The translations under genes were made by a program, and so were the position numbers. This document shows, in pieces, positions 36-42,500 of a stretch of DNA of 64,000 nucleotides. The stretch comes from Adineta vaga (lineage: Eukaryota > Animalia > Rotifera): contig CP075495.1 in NCBI GenBank assembly GCA_021613535.1, positions 6,262,001 to 6,326,000 of the forward strand, read 5' to 3'. The notes under the pieces were generated by a model. The model was not told the DNA's origin. It searched no databases and was given only the letters and a program-made list of their open reading frames with translations. Position 1 is the first letter of the stretch. Each line of letters starts with the position of its first letter.

Positions 36-2276
36 CATGAAATTATATTTCCAGTGACAATTGAACCTGAAATGTGCAATACAATTCCAAATATTTGTGA
101 ATTTTATCGTCCTATACGTAAATATATTTATTCGATTTTATTTGATAATGATACGATTATACGCGAACAAGTTTATAATAGCGAACATGGATCTTATTTA
201 ACTGAAGTATTATGTGAACAATTATCATTAAAACATACGATTGAACAACTTTGGTTTGGTACAAGTCCGGATGAAGATCGACAAATACGAATGAAAACAT
301 TTTTACAATCATTATCTTATTGTGATTTACCAAAGATTTATTCCATTGCTCATGATTATCTTCTTTTTACTTGTATATTACGTTATATCTATATGGAATT
401 CTTTCGTTATTCATCAACATCAGCTATTTTACATACGTATGAACTGATTGCATTTATTTCTCAAGCTGTTCTTATTACAGAATTACAACCAAAACCATTA
501 ATGAATTTACAATCAACAAATTTTTTAAATCAATATGATCATATACAAATCACAAATTATGAAACTCGACCAATTCAATTAGCACATCTATTTATGCGAG
601 GTTTAGAAACAGTTCTCTTTGCAAATGAAGTATGTGGTGCACCAATTCATCCGAAATATTCTTGTCCATCACATTTTTTCAATGGAAAATTATTTCATCA
701 AAAATATGTACAAGCACAATATTATCAACAAAATCAAGATTTAGTAATGATATTATGTGATGGAAATGTGAGGGAAAGAGCTTGTTTACATTTTTGAATT
801 GTATTAAAAACAATACTTATCGTCGTCTTTTTTTAGGCACATTGTGCTCAAATTGTCTCATATTTACTCGATATCGTACTCGATCGAGCACCGGATGATA
901 CTATTCATCATACTCCCATGCAACAGCAACAGTATCAGCATCCTATAGTTCCACAACAACATCAACAGCAACGGGTTACAAAAAATCAAACTCGACAAAC
1001 TCTTCTAGCAAATTCAATACGTCCGCCTATGCGTACGAATGTTAAACAGTTGATAACAAATAATGGTTATAATCAACAACAAACACCTGTTACAAATTAT
1101 CGTTCACAACAGCAACAACAACAACAACCACCACCACTACCGGTGAAACAAGCTGGTCAAATGAGAAATGGCGGAATAAAAAAAATTAATAACGGTAATT
1201 TATACTTCTTTTTCTCAAAACTACTTTTGAAATTAAATGAATCGTTTTATAATCTCTATTTTAGCTACACCATTCAATACAAAAACTCATCAACAATCAA
1301 GAAAATTTCATCCTCGTACACCAACAAATATGAACTTTGTTAATCAATCACAGCAAAATTCATTCCCTGTTGAGCAATGGACTACTTCTACACCATCTGC
1401 AATGCCTTCTAATCATTTACCCATGCAAACTCAACATCATCAATCTCATGCAATCAACAATATACCATCCATGCCTCTTCAACATCAACAATCACTCAAT
1501 AATAAGTAAGAAATGATCTTTACATATATTTCATCTCATCGATTCTGGTGTAGAATAACTAATACATTTGATAATTTAGTTATATTAATCCTCTTGATGA
1601 ACAATTTGTGCATCTTCAAATTCATCCATCAACTATTATGACGACACCAACACCAATGCCATATCCTCATCCAACTGCAATGCTCAATCCTCATATACCA
1701 ATGACTCCATACAATCATCTTCAACATCAACCTGTATATACTATTCCTAATGGACCATTATTCTATCAATCATCACCTTCAACAGCACTTACTTCATTTC
1801 AACCACCTCTAACAACACCTTACCATCCTCCTCCACCTCCTCCTCCTCATCCAATGTTACCCGGTCATCCACCACATGCACCAGTGGCCTCCCAACGAAC
1901 AGTTAATTTTACTACAATAGTTCCAACGAATAATAATATAAATAATTATTCCCAACAATCTCAACGTCTTTCTCCAACATCAATTCAAAGTCAAGAAATG
2001 AATATTCAGGAATTACAACAACGTATGATTGAACAACAAAAACATCAGCCAACACCGATAGCAATTCATCGACAAATGAATCGAATGATTACCAATGATT
2101 ATGCTCCGTAAGTGCATGAATGTTTCTGTCTCTTCAAATCAAAATTTTCTTATTTTCTTGTTTTTAGCTATGATATTCATCAATCAATATCAAATAATGG
2201 TATGCCAATGTCCATGCAATCATGCCATCATCCGTCCATGTTTATCGAATATCAGCAACGACTTCATGGTCATTAA
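36..2276 (+). CDS. FAM120-family protein, 3' part (multi-exon, 5' end outside window), Q/P/H-rich tail
   Basis: Motifs RPIRKYIYSILF and AHLFMRGLETVLFANEVCGAP..FFNGKLFHQKY resemble FAM120A/B/C. Acceptor at 35/36; GT-AG introns link ORFs 54, 918, 1237 and 1608; last exon 2168-2276 ends TAA. Confidence 0.75.
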
Positions 2277-25856: not shown

Positions 25857-26479
25857 TTCATCACTCATATTCAACGAACAGTGTTTCTTTTTTCGTGATG
25901 TTTTCTTTTTTTGTTCGAACTATATTCGTATCAAAAATTGAGACAATAGAAACACATCGATGACTTTTTTCGTCCATAAAAACAGATTTTTCTTTTAATG
26001 ACATGTGCTTGTAACTTCTTTTTTTTCAAATGCATATGTTCTAGTTTCAATTAGTACTTATCACCCACCAATATTCGTTTGCGTGTTTATGTACATATAT
26101 ATATTTAATCATCTTGTTAAAGTGCAACTGTATGATGAATTTGGCATTATTTTCTTTCTTCTTCTAAATGCCTAGATTGGTGCTCTCCTTTGTTCGTTGC
26201 TATTAGAAAAAATATTGCGATTATTCTTGTTATTGTTGTTGTTCTTCTAATCCTTTTCTTTTTTCGTCTTGTCTTCTCCTGTTTTTAGTGATCACAAACA
26301 AAACAAAAAAAAACAAAATAATAATAATAATAATACAATAAATTATCAATCAACAGAAACGAAAAGATGTCAGATTTTATCTATTTCATACATCTAAAAG
26401 TGAACAAATGTCAGACATTTACAGAAAAGTTTCTTTTTCTCATTCAAATAATCAAAATAAAAAGATTACTGTTGCCAGT

Positions 26480-28143
26480 ATGCCATACGAATCGCATGCT
26501 ATTTCTTTTGAACTTAATCCACATCTGCTTGAAGCATCTTATTCAATTTACATTTATCTGTAAGAATTATTATTTTATATCACCCATATATAAAGAAATT
26601 AGTTCATCTTTCATCAGGATTCTTTATCTTTACGATTGTTTCTCTCTTGAGAAAAGATTTTTCATATAGTAATAAAAATATAAAATAATTAGAAGATGTA
26701 ATATAGAACTGATCCCTTGTTTATAACTAATATCTAAGAAATCGATAGTGCAGAGAAGGAAAAACAAATAATAAAAAGCTTACGACACTCGGTATTCCCA
26801 GGCGGTCACCCATCCAAGTACTAACCGAGCCCGACGTTGCTTAACTTCAGTGATCGGACGAGAACTGGTGTATTCAACGTGGTATGGCCGTAAGCGAATA
26901 TTATCACTTCTAACTGTTCTTATAAACTTAACTTTAAAAAAATTATATATGACATTGACTTACTAATTTTAGGTATGATGCATCGTCTTATCTGGAACTA
27001 AAATATCAGTATGCTGCCGAAATACCACGAGATCTCATTGAATTGCATAAAGGAAAAAATATGTGGGTCGAAATAACTAGTCGAGATCTTGATCTAATTC
27101 GTGATGTTTTAATTTATTTTGATGCTCATTCATTTGCTATTGATGATATTCCAATAGAAGATCAACGGATGAAAATATCAATATTAAATGAAGATATTTA
27201 TCTTTTACTTGATTTGATCTATTTAAATAATACAAATCATATTATTGAACAACAAAAAATGACTTTTTATTTAATAGAAAATACTTTGATTACTATAGAA
27301 CAATATGGTACACATGATCTATTTTCAGTAATTAAACGTCGTTTAGCTAAAAAGACAACCCAATCAAAAGGTCTTCTGAAAAAAATGAAAATAGATTATT
27401 TATTCTATTGTTTACTTAATGTTCTTATCGAAAATTATGTTATTGTCTTAGATTCTATTTTACACGAAACGGAACTGATTGATAAACATTTGATGTTTTC
27501 AACTAAACCAAAAGCTGATATTATGACTGTTGATATATTAAAATTAATGTTTCATATCAAGCATGATTTACTCCATTTTAAAATTGTTTGTGCACCATTG
27601 AAAGATATTATGATCAAACTTCAGAAAACTCGAGAAACAGTTGTTCCGAAACGACAACGACCAGCATTACGTCAATGTCGACGACGATTAAAACGACGTT
27701 TACGATTAGTTATCGGTCACAATCACAATTGTGCATACATGGCACCACCAACATCTCCAATCAGTACTAACAATGATGACGATGAATATGCAGTTGATGA
27801 TGGTCTCTTAGTCTTCAATGATTATATTTATAAATATTTCAAACGTCTACTTGATCATACAGTTGAATTAAATGATATGATCGATTCATCTGCAGATACT
27901 ATAACATCATTGATTGATTTCTATATGATTCTAAATGGAGAACTGAGTAATGATACAATTCAAACTTTAACTGTAATGTCATGTATTTTTATGCCTTTAA
28001 ATTTTCTATCCAGTCTTAGTTCGATGAACTTTGATCATATGCCACAAATACCAATGCGTTTTGGATATTATGGACAGTTGGGATTTATGGTAGTTATTGC
28101 GTTTGTAATGACTATGTATTTTAAAATCAAAAAGTTAATTTAA
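26480..28143 (+). CDS. CorA-family (bacterial-type) divalent cation transporter; exon 1 26480-26559, intron 26560-26972, exon 2 26973-28143
   Basis: MWVEI..DQRMK..DYLFYCLLNVLIENY..LLDH..NDTIQTLTVMSCIFMPLNFLSSLSSMNFDHMPQIPMRFGY with two C-terminal TM helices. The phase-2 GTAAG..TTTTAG intron joins the two exons in frame. Confidence 0.85.
26777..26895 (-). rRNA. 5S rRNA gene, copy 1 (intronic, antisense to CorA)
   Basis: 119-nt GCTTACGGCCATACC..GATC..AGTTAAGC..AGTACTTGGATGGGTGACCGCCTGGGAATACC..GTAAGCT followed by a T-run Pol III terminator. Confidence 0.98.
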
Positions 28144-28312
28144 CCTTTAATTAAATAGAATTTCTCGGTTGTTTTGTACCTAAGAAGATAATTTATAGAA
28201 TATTGAAAAGAATCGATCATAACATGTGATACTGTAACACTTTCTTTTATTTGAAATGATATTTTAAAACTATAGAACATCTATAATTATAAGAAGAAGA
28301 AAAATAATAAAA

Positions 28313-28431
28313 AGCTTACGACACTCGGTATTCCCAGGCGGTCACCCATCCAAGTACTAACCGAGCCCGACGTTGCTTAACTTCAGTGATCGGACGAGAA
28401 CTGGTGTATTCAACGTGGTATGGCCGTAAGC
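28313..28431 (-). rRNA. 5S rRNA gene, copy 2
   Basis: Identical to copy 1, with T-run terminator. Confidence 0.98.
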
Positions 28432-28508
28432 GAATATTATCAATTCTAACTCTTCTTTTAAACTTAACTTTAAAAAAATAATATATGACATTGACTTGCT
28501 AATTTTAG

Positions 28509-28617
28509 GTATCATGCATGGTCTTATCTGGAACTGAAATACCACGAGATCTCATTGAATTGCATAAAGGAAAAAATATGTGGGTCGAAATAACTAGTCG
28601 AGATCTCGATCTAATTC
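28509..28617 (+). pseudogene. Truncated duplicate of the 5' part of CorA exon 2, with a 19-bp deletion
   Basis: Matches 26973-27100; the preceding intron end and acceptor (28432-28508) are also duplicated; similarity ends abruptly at 28617. Confidence 0.9.
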
Positions 28618-29006
28618 TGATTATATTTGAATTCTAATAGGTTTTGTTAAAATAACTCGATTGAATTGAAAATATTTCGAAAATAATTAAATAAACGAAA
28701 TTTTGAAGATGTGAGACGATTTTTTTGAATTTATTATTTATAATGAAATAATGAAATAAAGCTTTCAATCATCGCCGTTCATCATCAGTATACACCACCA
28801 GCAAATATAATAACTATTTGAAATCGAAGATTAAAATATGATTAGATTTTAATTCTAATAGGTTTTGTTAAAATAACTGGAATAAATTCAAAAAATTGTC
28901 TCAAATCCTGAATTTTTCCTTAATTTAATTATTTTCGAAATATTTTCAATTCAATCGAGGTATTTTAACAAAACCTATTAGAATTAAAATCTAATCATAT
29001 TTTAGT
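28618..29006. mobile_element. Foldback/MITE-like element with nested inverted repeats
   Basis: 28618-28692 is the near-exact reverse complement of ~28923-28997; an internal direct copy lies at ~28832-28878; a second IR pair lies at 28712-28735 / ~28881-28903. Confidence 0.7.
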
Positions 29007-37841: not shown

Positions 37842-38246
37842 TATGTACAAGGGTCGATTATTTTCCAAAATTCAATTTGAAATATAAAAGACCATAGACT
37901 CAAAATGAAAAGGAGAATGAAGCCTATACTGGAAATGACGTGTTCATGCCAATTTTTTAAGAGCTTTTTAGGAAGGAAAATAAATACGGATGATGCATTT
38001 TTGAGGAATATCAACCGATCAGTTCCTTGAATCTATCTAACAGTACTTGTTTTTCCTTTTCTCTTGCAATCAATGATTTTATGATACTTAGAAAGAATGA
38101 AAAGATGAAAAACACTTTTAAAAGTCTTTTATGTATAAAGTTTGGTTGGATCCGGATTCGGCCAGGTTCCGCTTTGTGGGTTTGCTGAGCACTCTTATCA
38201 TTCTTTCAGAAAAGGGTCAGCGAATCCAAAGGATGAGCGTTACTTG

Positions 38247-38473
38247 TGGTGATTATTGCGTTTGTAATGACTATTTATTTTAAAATCAAAAAGTTACTTT
38301 AATCTTTAATTAAATAGAATTTCTCGGTTGTTTCGTACCTAAGAAGATAATTTATAGAATATATTAAAAAGAATCAATCATAACATGTGATACTGTAACA
38401 CTTTCTTTTATTTGAAATGATATTTTAAAACTATAGAACATCTATAATTATAAGAAGAAGAAAAATAATAAAA
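38247..38473 (+). pseudogene. Duplicate of the CorA 3' end and downstream spacer
   Basis: Near-identical to 28088-28312 and runs directly into 5S copy 3. Confidence 0.9.
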
Positions 38474-38592
38474 AGCTTACGACACTCGGTATTCCCAGGC
38501 GGTCACCCATCCAAGTACTAACCGAGCCCGACGTTGCTTAACTTCAGTGATCGGACGAGAACTGGTGTATTCAACGTGGTATGGCCGTAAGC
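38474..38592 (-). rRNA. 5S rRNA gene, copy 3
   Basis: Identical to copy 1. Confidence 0.98.
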
Positions 38593-38931: not shown

Positions 38932-39050
38932 AGCTTACGACACTCGGTATTCCCAGGCGGTCACCCATCCAAGTACTAACCGAGCCCGACGTTGCTTAAC
39001 TTCAGTGATCGGACGAGAACTGGTGTATTCAACGTGGTATGGCCGTAAGC
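38932..39050 (-). rRNA. 5S rRNA gene, copy 4
   Basis: Identical to copy 1; different flanks. Confidence 0.98.
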
Positions 39051-39579: not shown

Positions 39580-42500
39580 TTAAATAACTATATTTTTATT
39601 TTTCTTTGACCATACTTGAGTTTCACACAATTCAACAGCCTAAAATTTAAATGAAAGACACATAGATAAAGTCGTTAGAATAGACAATAAAATATTTACA
39701 TTGCATAAAATAGCATTTTGACGACTTGTACACCAGTAGTTCATGCCGTATATACATTTTCCATAAGTTGTTGGTTTTGATGTTGAAACTGGAGGAGTTG
39801 ATTGACGATGAGTTGATGTTTGTAATGGAGAATTAGTTTTACATATACCAATACTCTGACAAGCAACTTTTGGATCAACGTCACTAGAGATCATTTGAAT
39901 AAGATATTGCCCATATTGATCAATAAAATCATCACATTGTTTCTTTAAATTAATGAAAGAAAAGGAATCACATGATTTTTTTAACGTAGCCATAATTTCT
40001 TCTTCAGTTTGATTAAGAGTGATATAATGTTTCATACGTGAAACAACATATTGACAAATTGTACATGAAAGTTCAGGCTGTTTTTCTGGTAAATGTACAT
40101 AATCATGGTTTGGATAGGTTACTGGTGTTGGCTTTTTTGTTATTTTCTCTGTTGGTAATGAAACTTGACACATTCCAAGATAACGACAAATTGTATCTGG
40201 ATCAGCCATTTCAGCAATTAACTCAGCAAGAACTGGTCCATAAGTTTTAACAAATTCTACACACTGAGCACGTTCTTTACCTATAGATCAGAAAAATAAC
40301 TTATGTAAATTCTTTCATATGACGATAAACAAAACTTACTTGGTAAGATGGTACACACTTTTTCTAGAGCAGCTTCAACTGCTGCTTCAGATTTGTTGGT
40401 CTTTAAAACCGCATCTAGATATGAAACAACATAATGACATAATGTACATTGTGGAGTATCATCTAAATTTTTGGTAAGTATCCGTTTAATTTCATCATCT
40501 TTTTCTAATGTTTCATGAATGATTACTGGTGCGCTTGTACTAGTTTCATCCTTTTCTGTTTGACAAATAGTTAATTGTTTACAGAAATTATTACCCAAAT
40601 GAAGTTCTAATTTTCGAATATGTGGTCGAAATAGTTGAACCAACATTTGACATTGTGACATTTGTTCAGTTGATAGATGTGAACAAACAGTGGATAATGC
40701 ATTTTCAAGCGATTTATCACTTGAATCACGTTTTAATGCAAAATTAATATATGTTGAAACATAATCACAGACACCACATGATGCTTGATTAGCTTTGGTA
40801 ACATGTGATAATTCTACTTTCATTTCTTTCGTACATAGATTAAGTTTTTGACAGATGGTTTTAGTATCGAAATGACCGATGAGTGTTGCAATGATTGATG
40901 GACCATAATTATCAATTAATTCATGACACTGTTTTTTAAGTGTTGCTGGCATTTGATTGCAAACTTTTTGAAGACTTTGTTCAATTTCATCTTCTGTCGA
41001 TTGTTGATGAATATAACTTTCAAGAATATGCATGACATATTCACAGAGAATACAAGTTGAATTGGAATCATTGACTACTTCTGGTTCAGGTTGTTTTGGT
41101 AGAACAACAACGGATGTATGTGGTAAATGTTGTTCCAATGTTTGCTGATCATTTTCAATTGAATGAGTAAAAGCATATAAAGCTTCTTCACAAGATTGTT
41201 GAAAAACACCCATATTTGCACATAAAGTTGAAACATTGCAAAAACCAAGACGAGTACAAATTTGTTTAGCATCAATACCATCAATACATGAATCATATTG
41301 TGTTTCTGTATCTTTCCAATATTTACGACATTGATCTTTTGATGGACAATAATCACAAGCACGAATAAATACTGAGATAACATTATCAACAGCACCCTTT
41401 GCACATTCTTTCTTTTGATTAACTTGATCGACACAACATTGACATTTATCTTGACTACATTTATCTAAATAGAACACACAAACAATTAGTGAAATGTTAT
41501 TGGCTTTTTCATTCTATTGAATGAATTGACTTACTAAGATTTGAAGCAGTGAAGAAATTCGTTGTTTTCTTTTCACCAATTTGCATTAAATCTTTAATGT
41601 TATAGTTAATTTTGATTGTTTCAATTTGTTTTCTATTGCCACGGATCATTTGTTTACATAATGATTCAAATGGTCCAAGTGTTGAACAAACACTTTTATC
41701 CAATTCATCTTCTAAAAACTTTTCAAATTTATCGAAATCCATCTCATTTGTTGTTGAACAAAAGCCAATGGCAGTACATGTTTGTTTTGGATCAAATTGT
41801 TTCACAGATTCTTCAAATGAAGTTCGGATTTGTTTTACAAATACTTGACATTGTTGACCAGCAAAACGTTGACAAAGATCATCAAAATAGGTAGCTACAC
41901 GATCAATACCACGTAAAATACCATCTTTTCGTTGTTGTAAACGTTCTACACAGGTTGTACATTTATCTGTTCCAATAGTATTATGCGATGAAGCACAGAG
42001 ATGAATATTTTGACAGAATTGTGCTGGATCAATATTATTCAAATACGATTTAAGATTATCAAATCGTCGATTGTAATAATCACGGCATTGATCTTTTACT
42101 GAACAACGTTCACATGTACGAAGAAGTACATCACGAATAGATTCCTAAAGAAAACTATATTGAGATAGTCAGATCGTATGAAAGGAGTCTTACTAAAGTA
42201 TTAATCCAGAAATCTTTCGATGATTGAACTGCATTTTTACACGACTGACAAACATCAGCATGAACATCGGTAGACATTTGTTCACGTAAATCATCATCAA
42301 TTAATTTTGGATTATTAGTTAACATAGCCATATAAGCATATGCATGACGATGACTATTTGATGATGCAATTAAATGTTCACACATAGGTCTCAATTGGCC
42401 ATACTGGAAGCAAACATCACTTGCTAAACTAGCTTCTAAACGTTGATCTAAAGCTTCAATTGATGAACCAGTATGATGATTGGAATTTATCAATAAACGT

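What the first reader, a model, noticed from the sequence alone, without database searches (positions are those of the whole stretch)
26480..28143. 5S rRNA gene nested antisense in the intron of a bacterial-type CorA gene
Seen: an 80-nt ATG exon (26480-26559) ends CT|GTAAG and splices in phase to TTTTAG|G at 26973, giving ..SIYIYL-YDASSY.., where CorA proteins have a beta-strand ending in Y-D. The 413-nt intron is far longer than the local ~55-nt norm and holds a complete 5S gene with its terminator. Known: animals normally carry the Mrs2 branch of CorA, and bdelloids acquire foreign genes that later gain introns. Inference: a horizontally acquired Mg2+/divalent transporter became interleaved with a Pol III 5S locus, so Pol II and Pol III transcribe it in opposite directions, possibly coupling metal transport with ribosome biogenesis.
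Basis: partly seen in the sequence, partly recalled or inferred. Interest (0 to 1): 0.85.

Follow-up and report, generated by a model that had tools for sequence, protein, structure and literature searches.

The report
5S gene inside CorA intron
In the rotifer Adineta vaga an intact 5S ribosomal RNA gene lies backwards inside the only intron of a bacterial-type CorA channel gene, an arrangement shared by most bdelloid rotifers examined and therefore old, though nothing yet shows that either gene regulates the other.

Summary
The window is Adineta vaga chromosome 2. A full-length 5S rRNA gene (26777-26895, minus strand, 115.8 bits, T-run terminator) lies between an 80-nt ATG exon (26480-26559) and a 1171-nt CorA exon (26973-28143). 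The flanking GTAAG and TTTTAG|G splice signals join the exons in phase.

The support is therefore comparative:
- The same 80-nt exon, splice sites and phase occur in seven loci from six other bdelloid genomes.
- A 119/119-identical minus-strand 5S sits 63-82 nt upstream of exon 2 in ten loci from nine other genomes (A. ricciae, three Rotaria, four environmental).
- A. steineri has a 78-nt intron without the 5S, and Didymodactylos has no intron at that site.
- The exon junction falls inside the first beta-strand of CorA.
- No conserved ATG exists in exon 2.

The protein is bacterial-type CorA, not Mrs2, is under purifying selection, and has S-M-N instead of G-M-N at the pore. More 5S copies follow the gene and probably drove a 1536-bp tandem duplication.

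The proposed coupling to ribosome biogenesis has no support. The first-stage scan also noted an intronic 5S elsewhere in this genome (s1-484752).

The parts
26406..26417 (+). Conserved element AAATGTCAGACA about 70 nt upstream of the start codon. It is part of the palindrome AAATGTC-A-GACATTT. Candidate transcription start or 5'UTR element of the CorA gene.
   Evidence: AAATGTCAG.CA is invariant across five taxa in alignment A1. It is not enriched in the window: 3 matches against 2.9 expected. Its function is inferred only.
26480..26559 (+). CorA exon 1, 80 nt, encoding MPYESHAISFELNPHLLEASYSIYIY plus the first two bases of a Leu codon.
   Evidence: An 80-nt exon running ATGCC...CT|GTAAG is present in seven loci from six other bdelloid genomes. 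Its pairwise identity is 0.71 against 0.60 for shuffled partners, the same as the first 80 nt of exon 2. Annotated orthologues P0004 and P0013 include it. Residues 21-27 of P0013 align with beta-strand 1 of T. maritima CorA.
26560..26972 (+). Intron 1, the only intron: 413 nt, GTAAGA...TTTTAG, phase 2.
   Evidence: Splice signals and phase are conserved while length ranges from 78 to about 660 nt across taxa. The 5' part of the intron is no more alike between taxa than shuffled sequence, 0.44 against 0.42. No spliced reads could be examined.
26777..26895 (-). 5S rRNA gene copy A, nested antisense in the intron. Its T-run terminator occupies 26772-26776.
   Evidence: RF00001 at 115.8 bits over model positions 1-120. 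It is 119/119 identical to 30 of 30 other A. vaga copies and to the copies upstream of exon 2 in Rotaria, A. ricciae and environmental bdelloids (local script).
26896..26972 (.). A 77-nt stretch used on both strands. It is the upstream region of the 5S, with a TATA-like TTTATAAGA at -31 to -23 (window 26918-26926, minus strand). It is also the 3' end of the CorA intron, with TTACTAAT and TTTTAG.
   Evidence: The spacing between the 5S start and the 3' splice site is 63-82 nt in all ten other loci that carry the 5S. An AT-rich element lies near -30 in six taxa. Both roles are inferred from sequence.
26973..28143 (+). CorA exon 2: 389 codons plus the last base of the split Leu codon, ending at the TAA stop.
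   Evidence: PF01544 at E 2.7e-30. T. maritima CorA at 4.5e-34. Intact orthologous ORFs of 385-389 codons in eight taxa, with dN/dS 0.10-0.45.
28021..28029 (+). Pore-loop motif S-M-N in place of the CorA hallmark G-M-N.
   Evidence: The motif scan found SSMNF or SAMNF throughout this clade. Other A. vaga paralogues and all bacterial hits checked keep YGMNF.
28297..28617 (+). Tandem duplicate, offset 1536 nt. It holds 5S copy B (28313-28431, minus strand), the 3' end of the intron, and the first roughly 145 nt of exon 2 with a 19-nt deletion. This is a truncated second CorA copy.
   Evidence: Repeat families D1 (96% identity) and D3 (99%), the 5S match, and alignment A2.
28613..29002 (.). A palindromic element of about 390 nt, foldback or MITE-like, at the breakpoint where the duplicated CorA fragment ends.
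   Evidence: Inverted repeat I1: 113-nt arms, 88% complementary.
38244..38592 (+). The rest of the second copy: the last roughly 60 nt of the CorA coding sequence, its 3' flank, and 5S copy C (38474-38592, minus strand).
   Evidence: Repeat family D2 at 94% identity, the sequence itself, and the 5S match.
38932..39050 (-). 5S copy D, the last member of the local minus-strand 5S cluster, lying before the saposin gene (39640-41477, minus strand).
   Evidence: 5S match and Pfam saposin domains. The same Grb2-like, CorA, 5S, saposin order occurs in A. steineri and the environmental loci L046 and L052.

Best explanation
This is a real and old nested-gene arrangement in bdelloid rotifers.

A two-exon gene for a bacterial-type CorA-family channel is transcribed by Pol II on the plus strand. 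Its single phase-2 intron holds a complete, apparently functional Pol III 5S rRNA gene on the minus strand. The main CorA exon lies inside a small minus-strand 5S cluster, with one copy in the intron and one to three copies after the stop codon.

The intron interrupts what was once a continuous CorA reading frame, inside the first beta-strand. The 5S has been in it since before Adineta and Rotaria diverged, and A. steineri removed it by an internal deletion. The last 63-82 nt of the intron serve two roles: upstream region of the 5S on one strand, and branch site and acceptor region of the intron on the other.

In A. vaga the identical 5S copies flanking exon 2 probably acted as direct repeats for an unequal exchange. 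That produced the 1536-bp tandem duplicate, whose CorA part was later truncated and split by about 9.6 kb of other DNA.

Status of each step:
- Shown: the gene identities, orientation, coordinates, conservation and duplication.
- Inferred from comparative evidence: cis-splicing across the 5S.
- Inferred, untested: activity of the intronic 5S, the unequal-exchange mechanism, and my reading that the co-residence is largely neutral (5S kept for its own sake, CorA tolerating it, with at most some head-on Pol III/Pol II interference).
For: Identity of the parts:
- Genome identified as A. vaga through P0001, with six contigs totalling 100.8 Mb.
- 5S at 115.8 bits, full length.
- CorA Pfam match at 2.7e-30.

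Exon 1 and the intron:
- The 80-nt exon, GTAAG donor, AG|GTAYGA acceptor and phase are conserved in A. steineri, R. magnacalcarata, R. sordida, Rotaria sp. Silwood1 and two environmental bdelloids.
- Exon 1 is as conserved as the start of exon 2, while the 5' part of the intron is at background.
- Independent annotations of A. steineri and R. magnacalcarata use the same splice model.
- The phmmer alignment of P0013 to T. maritima CorA runs without a gap across the junction: YSIHIYL|YDETTY against FEIEVMNYSIEEF.
- The 28 codons between the acceptor and Met30 are conserved as protein but hold no in-frame ATG. Met30 is Ile, Val or Thr in four orthologues, so the start codon must come from an upstream exon.

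Age of the arrangement:
- A minus-strand 5S lies 63-82 nt upstream of exon 2 in ten loci from nine other genomes.
- On the tree, A. steineri is nested within Adineta (support 97/96) and D. carnosus is sister to all, so a single loss explains the pattern.
- The intronic 5S is identical to 30 of 30 other genomic copies and identical across genera.

The host gene and its surroundings:
- dN/dS 0.10-0.45.
- Synteny Prx, Grb2-like, CorA, 5S, saposin.
- Tandem duplication.
Against:
- The NCBI model for this locus (P0001) starts at 27058, downstream of the 5S, and omits exon 1. That model also replaces the second transmembrane helix with a translation of antisense 5S copy B, so it is unreliable.
- Exon 1 is short and only 44-67% identical at the protein level between taxa, without a strong third-position bias.
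- Rotifers use spliced-leader trans-splicing (PMC1925144), so the acceptor at 26972/26973 could in principle take a leader.
- The identical 5S copies could be kept uniform by gene conversion rather than by use of this particular copy.
Confidence: 0.75

Rival explanations
1. Regulatory coupling. Head-on Pol III transcription of the intronic 5S acts as a roadblock to Pol II on the CorA gene, as the antisense MIR does in intron 1 of mammalian Polr3e. CorA output would then fall when 5S synthesis is high. The arrangement would be conserved because it links divalent-cation uptake to ribosome production.
For: - An antisense Pol III unit in the first intron is conserved in nine other genomes, with nearly fixed spacing to the acceptor.
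- The Polr3e/MIR precedent shows that such a unit can lower host expression (PMC5358760).
- Mg2+ is the main counter-ion of ribosomes (established knowledge).
Against: - All instances descend from one ancestor, so shared orientation and spacing count as one observation, not ten.
- A. steineri lost the 5S from the intron yet keeps an intact CorA.
- The pore motif is S-M-N, not G-M-N, so Mg2+ selectivity is doubtful.
- Another A. vaga 5S appears to sit in the intron of an unrelated gene in sense orientation (note s1-484752). This suggests that intron residence is simply where dispersed 5S copies survive in a compact genome.
- There are no expression or occupancy data.
Confidence: 0.12
2. The 5S is upstream of the gene, not inside it. 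In A. vaga, transcription of CorA starts between the 5S and 27058, and translation starts at Met 27058 as in the NCBI model. The upstream 80-nt ORF is then a relic or a separate small ORF.
For: The NCBI model I4U23_007745 (P0001) begins at MWVE, position 27058. An ATG exists there in A. vaga and R. magnacalcarata.
Against: - Only 77 nt separate the 5S start from the acceptor, and 162 nt separate it from that ATG.
- The Met is not conserved: Ile in A. ricciae and A. steineri, Val in R. sordida, Thr in L046.
- The 28 codons before it are conserved as protein and align to CorA beta-strands.
- Exon 1, its ATG and both splice sites are conserved.
- The same NCBI model is demonstrably wrong at its 3' end.
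Confidence: 0.08
3. Trans-splicing. The acceptor at 26972/26973 receives the rotifer spliced leader, so the mature mRNA never includes exon 1, and the 5S lies in a discarded outron.
For: Spliced-leader trans-splicing exists in rotifers, bdelloids included (PMC1925144). The acceptor TTTTAG|G is strong.
Against: A leader would have to supply an in-frame ATG for the 28 conserved codons. A conserved 80-nt ORF with its own ATG and a conserved GTAAG donor in the right phase would then go unexplained.
Confidence: 0.05

Closest known systems
Antisense MIR (a Pol III unit) in the first intron of mammalian Polr3e (Yeganeh et al. 2017, PMC5358760)
   Same: A Pol III transcription unit is nested antisense in the first intron of a Pol II gene and is conserved across a whole animal clade. 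It offers a ready mechanism, head-on transcriptional interference.
   Different: Here the nested unit is a bona fide, full-length 5S rRNA gene identical to the genome's other copies, not a SINE relic. The host is a CorA channel, not a Pol III subunit. Pol III occupancy and any effect on the host are untested.
tRNA genes nested in introns of protein-coding genes, as in nematodes, flies and mammals (established knowledge; not searched here)
   Same: Short Pol III genes with internal promoters are tolerated inside Pol II introns in either orientation, usually with no demonstrated regulatory role.
   Different: 5S genes are classically found in tandem arrays or linked to rDNA, spliced-leader or histone repeats. 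My three library searches on 5S organisation found no report of an intronic 5S gene, conserved or not.
Thermotoga maritima CorA (PDB 4EEB, 3JCF, 2BBJ), the prokaryotic CorA Mg2+/Co2+ channel
   Same: It is the best solved relative at E 4.5e-34. The alignment covers the N-terminal alpha/beta domain, the stalk helix, both transmembrane helices and the MPEL-like loop (MPQIP). Lengths are similar apart from one insertion.
   Different: Identity is about 30%. The protein has a basic-then-acidic insertion of about 60 residues in the stalk (roughly residues 224-285 of the exon 2 translation). Gly of G-M-N is replaced by Ser. It is encoded by a spliced animal gene.
Dispersed 5S rRNA genes, for example the scattered and dicistronic tRNA-5S genes of Yarrowia lipolytica (PMC2566860)
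   Same: The 5S genes are not in one tandem array. They are spread over all chromosomes as single copies and small clusters: at least 47 copies on six A. vaga chromosomes.
   Different: The bdelloid copies have their own T-run terminator and an AT-rich element near -30 and are not fused to tRNAs. At least this copy lies inside a protein-coding gene.

Membership tests
5S rRNA gene (Rfam RF00001) | Covariance-model score above the gathering threshold over the full model | tested here: met
   115.8 bits against a gathering score of 38, model positions 1-120, E 7.6e-25.
5S rRNA gene (Rfam RF00001) | Pol III terminator (a run of four or more T) directly after the 3' end | tested here: met
   The gene ends GCTTTTT on the 5S strand (window 26772-26776). 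The same is true in the five other taxa tabulated.
5S rRNA gene (Rfam RF00001) | The sequence is that of the functional genomic copies rather than a decayed pseudogene | tested here: met
   119/119 identical to 30 of 30 other A. vaga copies and to the copies upstream of exon 2 in Rotaria, A. ricciae and environmental bdelloids. Homogenisation by gene conversion cannot be excluded.
5S rRNA gene (Rfam RF00001) | Transcribed by Pol III from this particular copy | not testable with these tools
Spliceosomal intron joining exon 1 to exon 2 | GT-AG boundaries with conserved position and phase across orthologues | tested here: met
   GTAAG...AG|GTAYGA (CAG|C in A. ricciae), phase 2, with exon 1 at 80 nt in seven loci from six other genomes.
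Spliceosomal intron joining exon 1 to exon 2 | Spliced transcripts across the junction | not testable with these tools
CorA / MIT superfamily (Pfam PF01544, the '2-TM-GxN' proteins) | Pfam CorA domain above its cut-off | tested here: met
   106.2 bits against a cut-off of 27, E 2.7e-30.
CorA / MIT superfamily (Pfam PF01544, the '2-TM-GxN' proteins) | Two C-terminal transmembrane helices joined by a short acidic loop (MPEL-like) | tested here: met
   Residues 286-387 align with T. maritima CorA residues 227-328, covering TM1, the loop (MPQIP against MPEL) and TM2.
CorA / MIT superfamily (Pfam PF01544, the '2-TM-GxN' proteins) | G-M-N (GxN) signature at the end of TM1 | tested here: not met
   The motif is S-M-N at 28021-28029. 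The clade has S or A at this position throughout, while other A. vaga paralogues and all bacterial hits checked have YGMNF. The gene is homologous to CorA, but canonical Mg2+ channel function is not assured.
CorA / MIT superfamily (Pfam PF01544, the '2-TM-GxN' proteins) | Divalent-cation transport | not testable with these tools
   This needs complementation or flux assays.
Mrs2 (metazoan mitochondrial branch, Pfam PF22099) | Match to the MRS2-like model or to solved Mrs2 structures | tested here: not met
   At E<=0.1 only PF01544 matched. No Mrs2 chain matched at E<=1 in the PDB search. A. vaga has a separate MRS2-like gene at C2:15449234-15450022.
Horizontally acquired bacterial gene | Closest relatives outside the clade are bacterial, and no vertical metazoan relatives exist | tested here: inconclusive
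   Every named hit closer than about 35% identity is a bdelloid. The nearest named non-rotifer hits are Bacteroidota CorA: Sporocytophaga, Formosa and a Bacteroidales MAG.
Pol III roadblock of a host gene (Polr3e/MIR type) | Antisense Pol III unit in the first intron, conserved across a clade | tested here: met
Pol III roadblock of a host gene (Polr3e/MIR type) | Pol III occupancy, and a change in host expression when the unit is removed | not testable with these tools
   No ChIP or expression data are available. A. steineri, which lost the 5S, offers a natural comparison.

The most novel reading that the evidence does not exclude
The intron did not merely receive a 5S gene. It was created when a piece of 5S-bearing DNA landed inside the continuous reading frame of a horizontally acquired, originally intronless CorA gene, and it was rescued by splicing. 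Since then, head-on Pol III transcription (and perhaps pairing of the antisense-5S intron RNA with 5S rRNA) has tuned the expression of a non-canonical S-M-N cation channel to 5S output.

The evidence does not exclude this:
- Didymodactylos has an uninterrupted frame at this site and an intron elsewhere.
- Every intron-bearing lineage except A. steineri carries the 5S.
- The 5' end of the short A. steineri intron resembles that of A. vaga, as expected for an internal deletion.
Probability: 0.1. Interest if true: 0.75.

Novelty: new member of a known kind. Interest (0 to 1): 0.5.

Why it matters
- It shows that a genuine 5S rRNA gene, not a SINE or a tRNA, can sit inside a spliceosomal intron of a protein-coding gene and stay there through the divergence of bdelloid families. 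This adds 5S to the list of Pol III genes nested in Pol II genes.
- It provides a natural experiment on Pol II/Pol III collision: A. steineri has lost the nested gene, while its congeners keep it.
- It documents how bdelloid 5S genes are organised: many identical copies dispersed as singles and small clusters. It also shows how they can drive local duplication.
- The 5S copies derail the reference annotation of this gene at both ends. Similar errors are likely wherever 5S copies touch genes in bdelloid assemblies.
- The host gene is unusual in its own right. It belongs to a bdelloid-wide clade of bacterial-type CorA with Ser or Ala in place of the supposedly invariant Gly of G-M-N.

Tried and rejected
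- **Read evidence.** The look-up of sequencing runs on exon 2 listed 16 runs. The whole-copy identity count was a local string comparison.
- **Joined spliced model.** Exons were searched separately, and natural full-length orthologues (P0004, P0013) stood in for it.
- **Metagenome scan.** It returned only one locus, L055. No cDNA-like contig with the exons already joined was found there or among the protein hits.
- **Literature.** Searches for 5S organisation in bdelloids, for intronic or nested 5S genes, and for CorA in rotifers found nothing relevant apart from the Polr3e/MIR paper. The 'CorA' hit in PMC11258130 was Corallococcus.
- **How common intronic 5S is in A. vaga.** Pfam scans of open segments beside 13 other 5S loci were mostly blank: one kinase domain in L030 and one EI24/CysZ ORF in L011. 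A crude scan for splice signals was not decisive. Only L003 looks clearly intronic.
- **Conserved upstream element.** The AAATGTCAG.CA element is not a common motif in the window, so I could not show it to be a general core-promoter element.
- **5S next to CorA paralogues.** None of the 47 scored 5S positions lies beside a paralogue. Only 47 of about 1030 candidates were scored, so this is weak evidence.
Full report
**What the window is.** The exon 2 ORF is 100% identical to the NCBI protein 'I4U23_007745 [Adineta vaga]'. The assembly has six contigs totalling 100.8 Mb, and the window is C2:6262001-6326000.

**The observation.**
- ATG at 26480.
- An 80-nt open stretch ending ...ATTTATCT|GTAAGA at 26559/26560.
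- TTTTAG|G at 26972/26973.
- An open frame from there to the TAA at 28141-28143.

The two bases CT plus the G form a Leu codon, so the join is in phase and reads ...SYSIYIYL-YDASSYLELKY.... Rfam finds a full-length 5S rRNA gene at 26777-26895 on the minus strand (115.8 bits against a gathering score of 38). On its own strand it ends GCTTTTT, a Pol III T-run. Pfam CorA matches the exon 2 ORF at E 2.7e-30.

**Read evidence could not be obtained.** I searched for runs with exon 2 alone. I then asked read laying for window:26200-28296. From that point I did the following:
- I screened later loci inside local scripts with a 66-nt marker taken from 26830-26895.
- I made the whole-copy identity count by local string comparison.
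Exons were searched by reference, and natural full-length orthologues were used instead.

**Is exon 1 real?** The comparative evidence is strong.
- The annotated orthologues of A. steineri (P0004) and Rotaria magnacalcarata (P0013) begin MPLELNATSLELTSHVNESTYSIHIYLYDE... and MPYQADKISFQLAPRFSDSSYSIHIYLYDE... The A. vaga exon encodes MPYESHAISFELNPHLLEASYSIYIYL.
- In genomic DNA, an 80-nt exon running ATGCC...CT|GTAAG followed by an acceptor AG|GTAYGA in the same phase is present in seven loci from six other genomes. These are A. steineri, R. magnacalcarata, R. sordida, Rotaria sp. Silwood1 and two environmental bdelloids.
- Exon length is invariant, while the intron ranges from 78 to about 660 nt.
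- Exon 1 is as conserved as the first 80 nt of exon 2 (0.71 and 0.70 mean identity against 0.60 for shuffled partners). The 5' part of the intron is at background (0.44 against 0.42).
- The phmmer alignment of P0013 to Thermotoga maritima CorA starts at residue 21 and runs without a gap across the junction: YSIHIYL|YDETTYMEFK against FEIEVMNYSIEEFREFK. The intron therefore splits the first beta-strand of the CorA N-terminal domain.
- The 28 codons between the acceptor and the first in-frame ATG of exon 2 (27058) are conserved as protein.
- That Met is Ile in A. ricciae and A. steineri, Val in R. sordida and Thr in L046. Exon 2 therefore has no conserved start codon of its own.
- An element AAATGTCAG.CA about 70 nt upstream of the ATG is invariant in five taxa. 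It may mark the transcription start. It is not a common motif in the window.

**The NCBI model is unreliable.** The NCBI model for this A. vaga gene (P0001) starts at 27058 and omits exon 1. It also splices 28089 to 28276 and ends in 35 residues of which the last 22 are a translation of antisense 5S copy B. This discards the conserved second transmembrane helix. I take both ends of that model to be artefacts caused by the 5S copies.

**How old is the nested 5S?** A minus-strand 5S sits 63-82 nt upstream of exon 2 in ten loci from nine other genomes:

| Locus | Source |
|---|---|
| L045 | R. magnacalcarata (intron 414 nt) |
| L047, L048 | R. sordida (one assembly shows two tandem copies in the intron) |
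| L054 | Rotaria sp. Silwood1 |
| L051 | A. ricciae (exon 1 is off the short contig) |
| L046, L052, L053, L055 | environmental contigs |

- A. steineri has the same intron at only 78 nt without a 5S. Its first 20 or so bases resemble the A. vaga intron, as expected after an internal deletion. It keeps a diverged 5S (5 mismatches) after the stop codon.
- The Didymodactylos carnosus homologue has an uninterrupted frame at this site and a GT-AG intron elsewhere.
- On a CorA tree, A. steineri is nested inside Adineta (support 97/96), Rotaria forms its own clade (97/97) and D. carnosus is sister to all.
- The simplest history is one origin before the Adineta-Rotaria split and one loss in A. steineri.
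- Every copy upstream of exon 2 in the other genomes checked is 119/119 identical to the A. vaga copy and to 30 of 30 other A. vaga 5S genes. The surrounding intron is saturated with substitutions. The nested copy is thus under the same constraint, or homogenisation, as all other 5S genes.

**The wider locus.**
- Gene order (peroxiredoxin, Grb2-like SH3-SH2-SH3, CorA, 5S copies, saposin) is shared among A. vaga, A. steineri, Rotaria and the environmental contigs.
- One to three further 5S copies follow the CorA stop codon in A. vaga, R. magnacalcarata, Silwood1 and L046. The large exon effectively lies inside a small 5S cluster.
- In A. vaga the segment from the 5S to the start of exon 2 recurs 1536 nt downstream at 96-99% identity with a 19-nt deletion (28297-28617).
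- The CorA 3' end plus flank plus 5S recurs at 38244-38592.
- This agrees with the first-stage note s1-484788: a tandem 5S+CorA duplicate whose CorA part is truncated and split by about 9.6 kb. A palindromic element of about 390 nt sits exactly at the breakpoint.
- Unequal exchange between the identical flanking 5S copies is the obvious mechanism, but it is inferred.

**The host gene.**
- Its best solved relatives are T. maritima CorA chains (4.5e-34). No Mrs2, Alr1 or ZntB chain reaches E<=1.
- Only PF01544 matches, and A. vaga has a separate MRS2-like gene. 'Bacterial-type CorA, not Mrs2' is supported.
- All named hits closer than about 35% identity are bdelloid. The nearest named outsiders are Bacteroidota CorA at about 30% identity.
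- Horizontal origin is plausible and fits the lineage-specific introns, but I did not build a tree with broad eukaryote sampling.
- The gene is intact in eight taxa, with dN/dS 0.10-0.45.
- Unexpectedly, the G-M-N hallmark is S-M-N here (28021-28029) and S or A throughout this clade. Other A. vaga CorA paralogues and the bacterial hits keep YGMNF. The transported ion is therefore uncertain.

**How it most likely works.**
- Pol II transcribes the CorA unit from upstream of 26480, through the antisense 5S, and the 413-nt intron is removed.
- Pol III transcribes the 5S in the opposite direction from its internal promoter. It is probably helped by the AT-rich element near -30 that lies in the last 77 nt of the intron. 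That short stretch is therefore constrained on both strands, which would explain its nearly fixed length.
- Head-on encounters of the two polymerases are expected, and the Polr3e/MIR case shows they can lower host expression (PMC5358760).
- Nothing here shows that the interference is used.
  - The ten conserved instances are one evolutionary event.
  - A. steineri dispensed with the 5S.
  - A. vaga has at least 47 dispersed identical 5S copies.
  - At least one other copy (L003) is bracketed by AAG|GTAAAG and TTTTTTTGTAG|G between two open segments, in sense orientation. This echoes the first-stage note s1-484752.
- My reading is that introns are simply one place where dispersed 5S genes persist in this compact genome. 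The link to ribosome biogenesis remains speculation.

**Verdict.** The structural interpretation is well supported by comparative data but still lacks transcript proof. The functional interpretation is unsupported. I found no published description of a 5S rRNA gene in an intron in the searches I ran. It is a new example of the known class of Pol III genes nested in Pol II introns, with three useful side results:
- the non-canonical pore motif;
- the 5S-mediated duplication;
- the derailed reference annotation.

Noticed in passing
L003:1380-1760 (G000:C1:9358241-9361359): Another solitary 5S lies between two same-strand open segments (1638-2423 and 1239-1469, minus strand). AAG|GTAAAG lies 24 nt before its start, and TTTTTTTGTAG|G lies about 70 nt after its T-run. 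This is probably a second intronic 5S in A. vaga, here in sense orientation. The host segments have no Pfam match.
   Followed up: partly
window 27058-28380: The NCBI model I4U23_007745 has CDS 27058-28089 plus 28276-28380. It lacks exon 1 and 28 conserved codons. It also replaces the second transmembrane helix with 35 residues whose last 22 are a translation of antisense 5S copy B. Both ends of the model appear to be derailed by 5S genes.
   Followed up: yes
window 28021-28029: The pore signature is S-M-N instead of G-M-N. The whole bdelloid clade has Ser or Ala at the 'invariant' Gly, and the paralogue at C5:15639026 has S-T-N. Other A. vaga CorA paralogues (C6:10377472, C3:6337080) and the bacterial relatives keep YGMNF.
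   Followed up: partly
window 28613-29002: A palindromic element of about 390 nt (113-nt arms, 88% complementary) that looks like a foldback or MITE. It sits exactly where the duplicated CorA fragment breaks off. A related 69-nt repeat lies at 28829-28897.
   Followed up: no
window 26406-26420: The palindrome AAATGTCAGACATTT lies about 70 nt upstream of the CorA start codon. Its core, AAATGTCAG.CA, is invariant in five bdelloid taxa, including a GC-richer one. Its function is unknown (transcription start or 5'UTR element?).
   Followed up: partly
G000, all six contigs: At least 47 5S genes were scored, out of about 1030 rough candidates, and all scored 115.8 bits. They occur as singles and as small tandem clusters with periods of about 315-570 nt (for example 11 copies at C4:3796431-3800838 with a period of about 430). 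Thirty of the 30 checked are 119/119 identical, and identical to Rotaria copies.
   Followed up: partly
L044:7530-7648 (A. steineri): The only 5S left at the A. steineri CorA locus, 213 nt after the stop codon, has 5 mismatches to the otherwise invariant bdelloid 5S and scores 100.6 bits. It may be a decaying copy.
   Followed up: no
L011:1756-2703 (G000:C2:15823675-15826793): An EI24/CysZ-family ORF (Pfam E 1e-21) begins about 137 nt downstream of a solitary 5S on the same strand. This is another tight pairing of a 5S with a gene.
   Followed up: no
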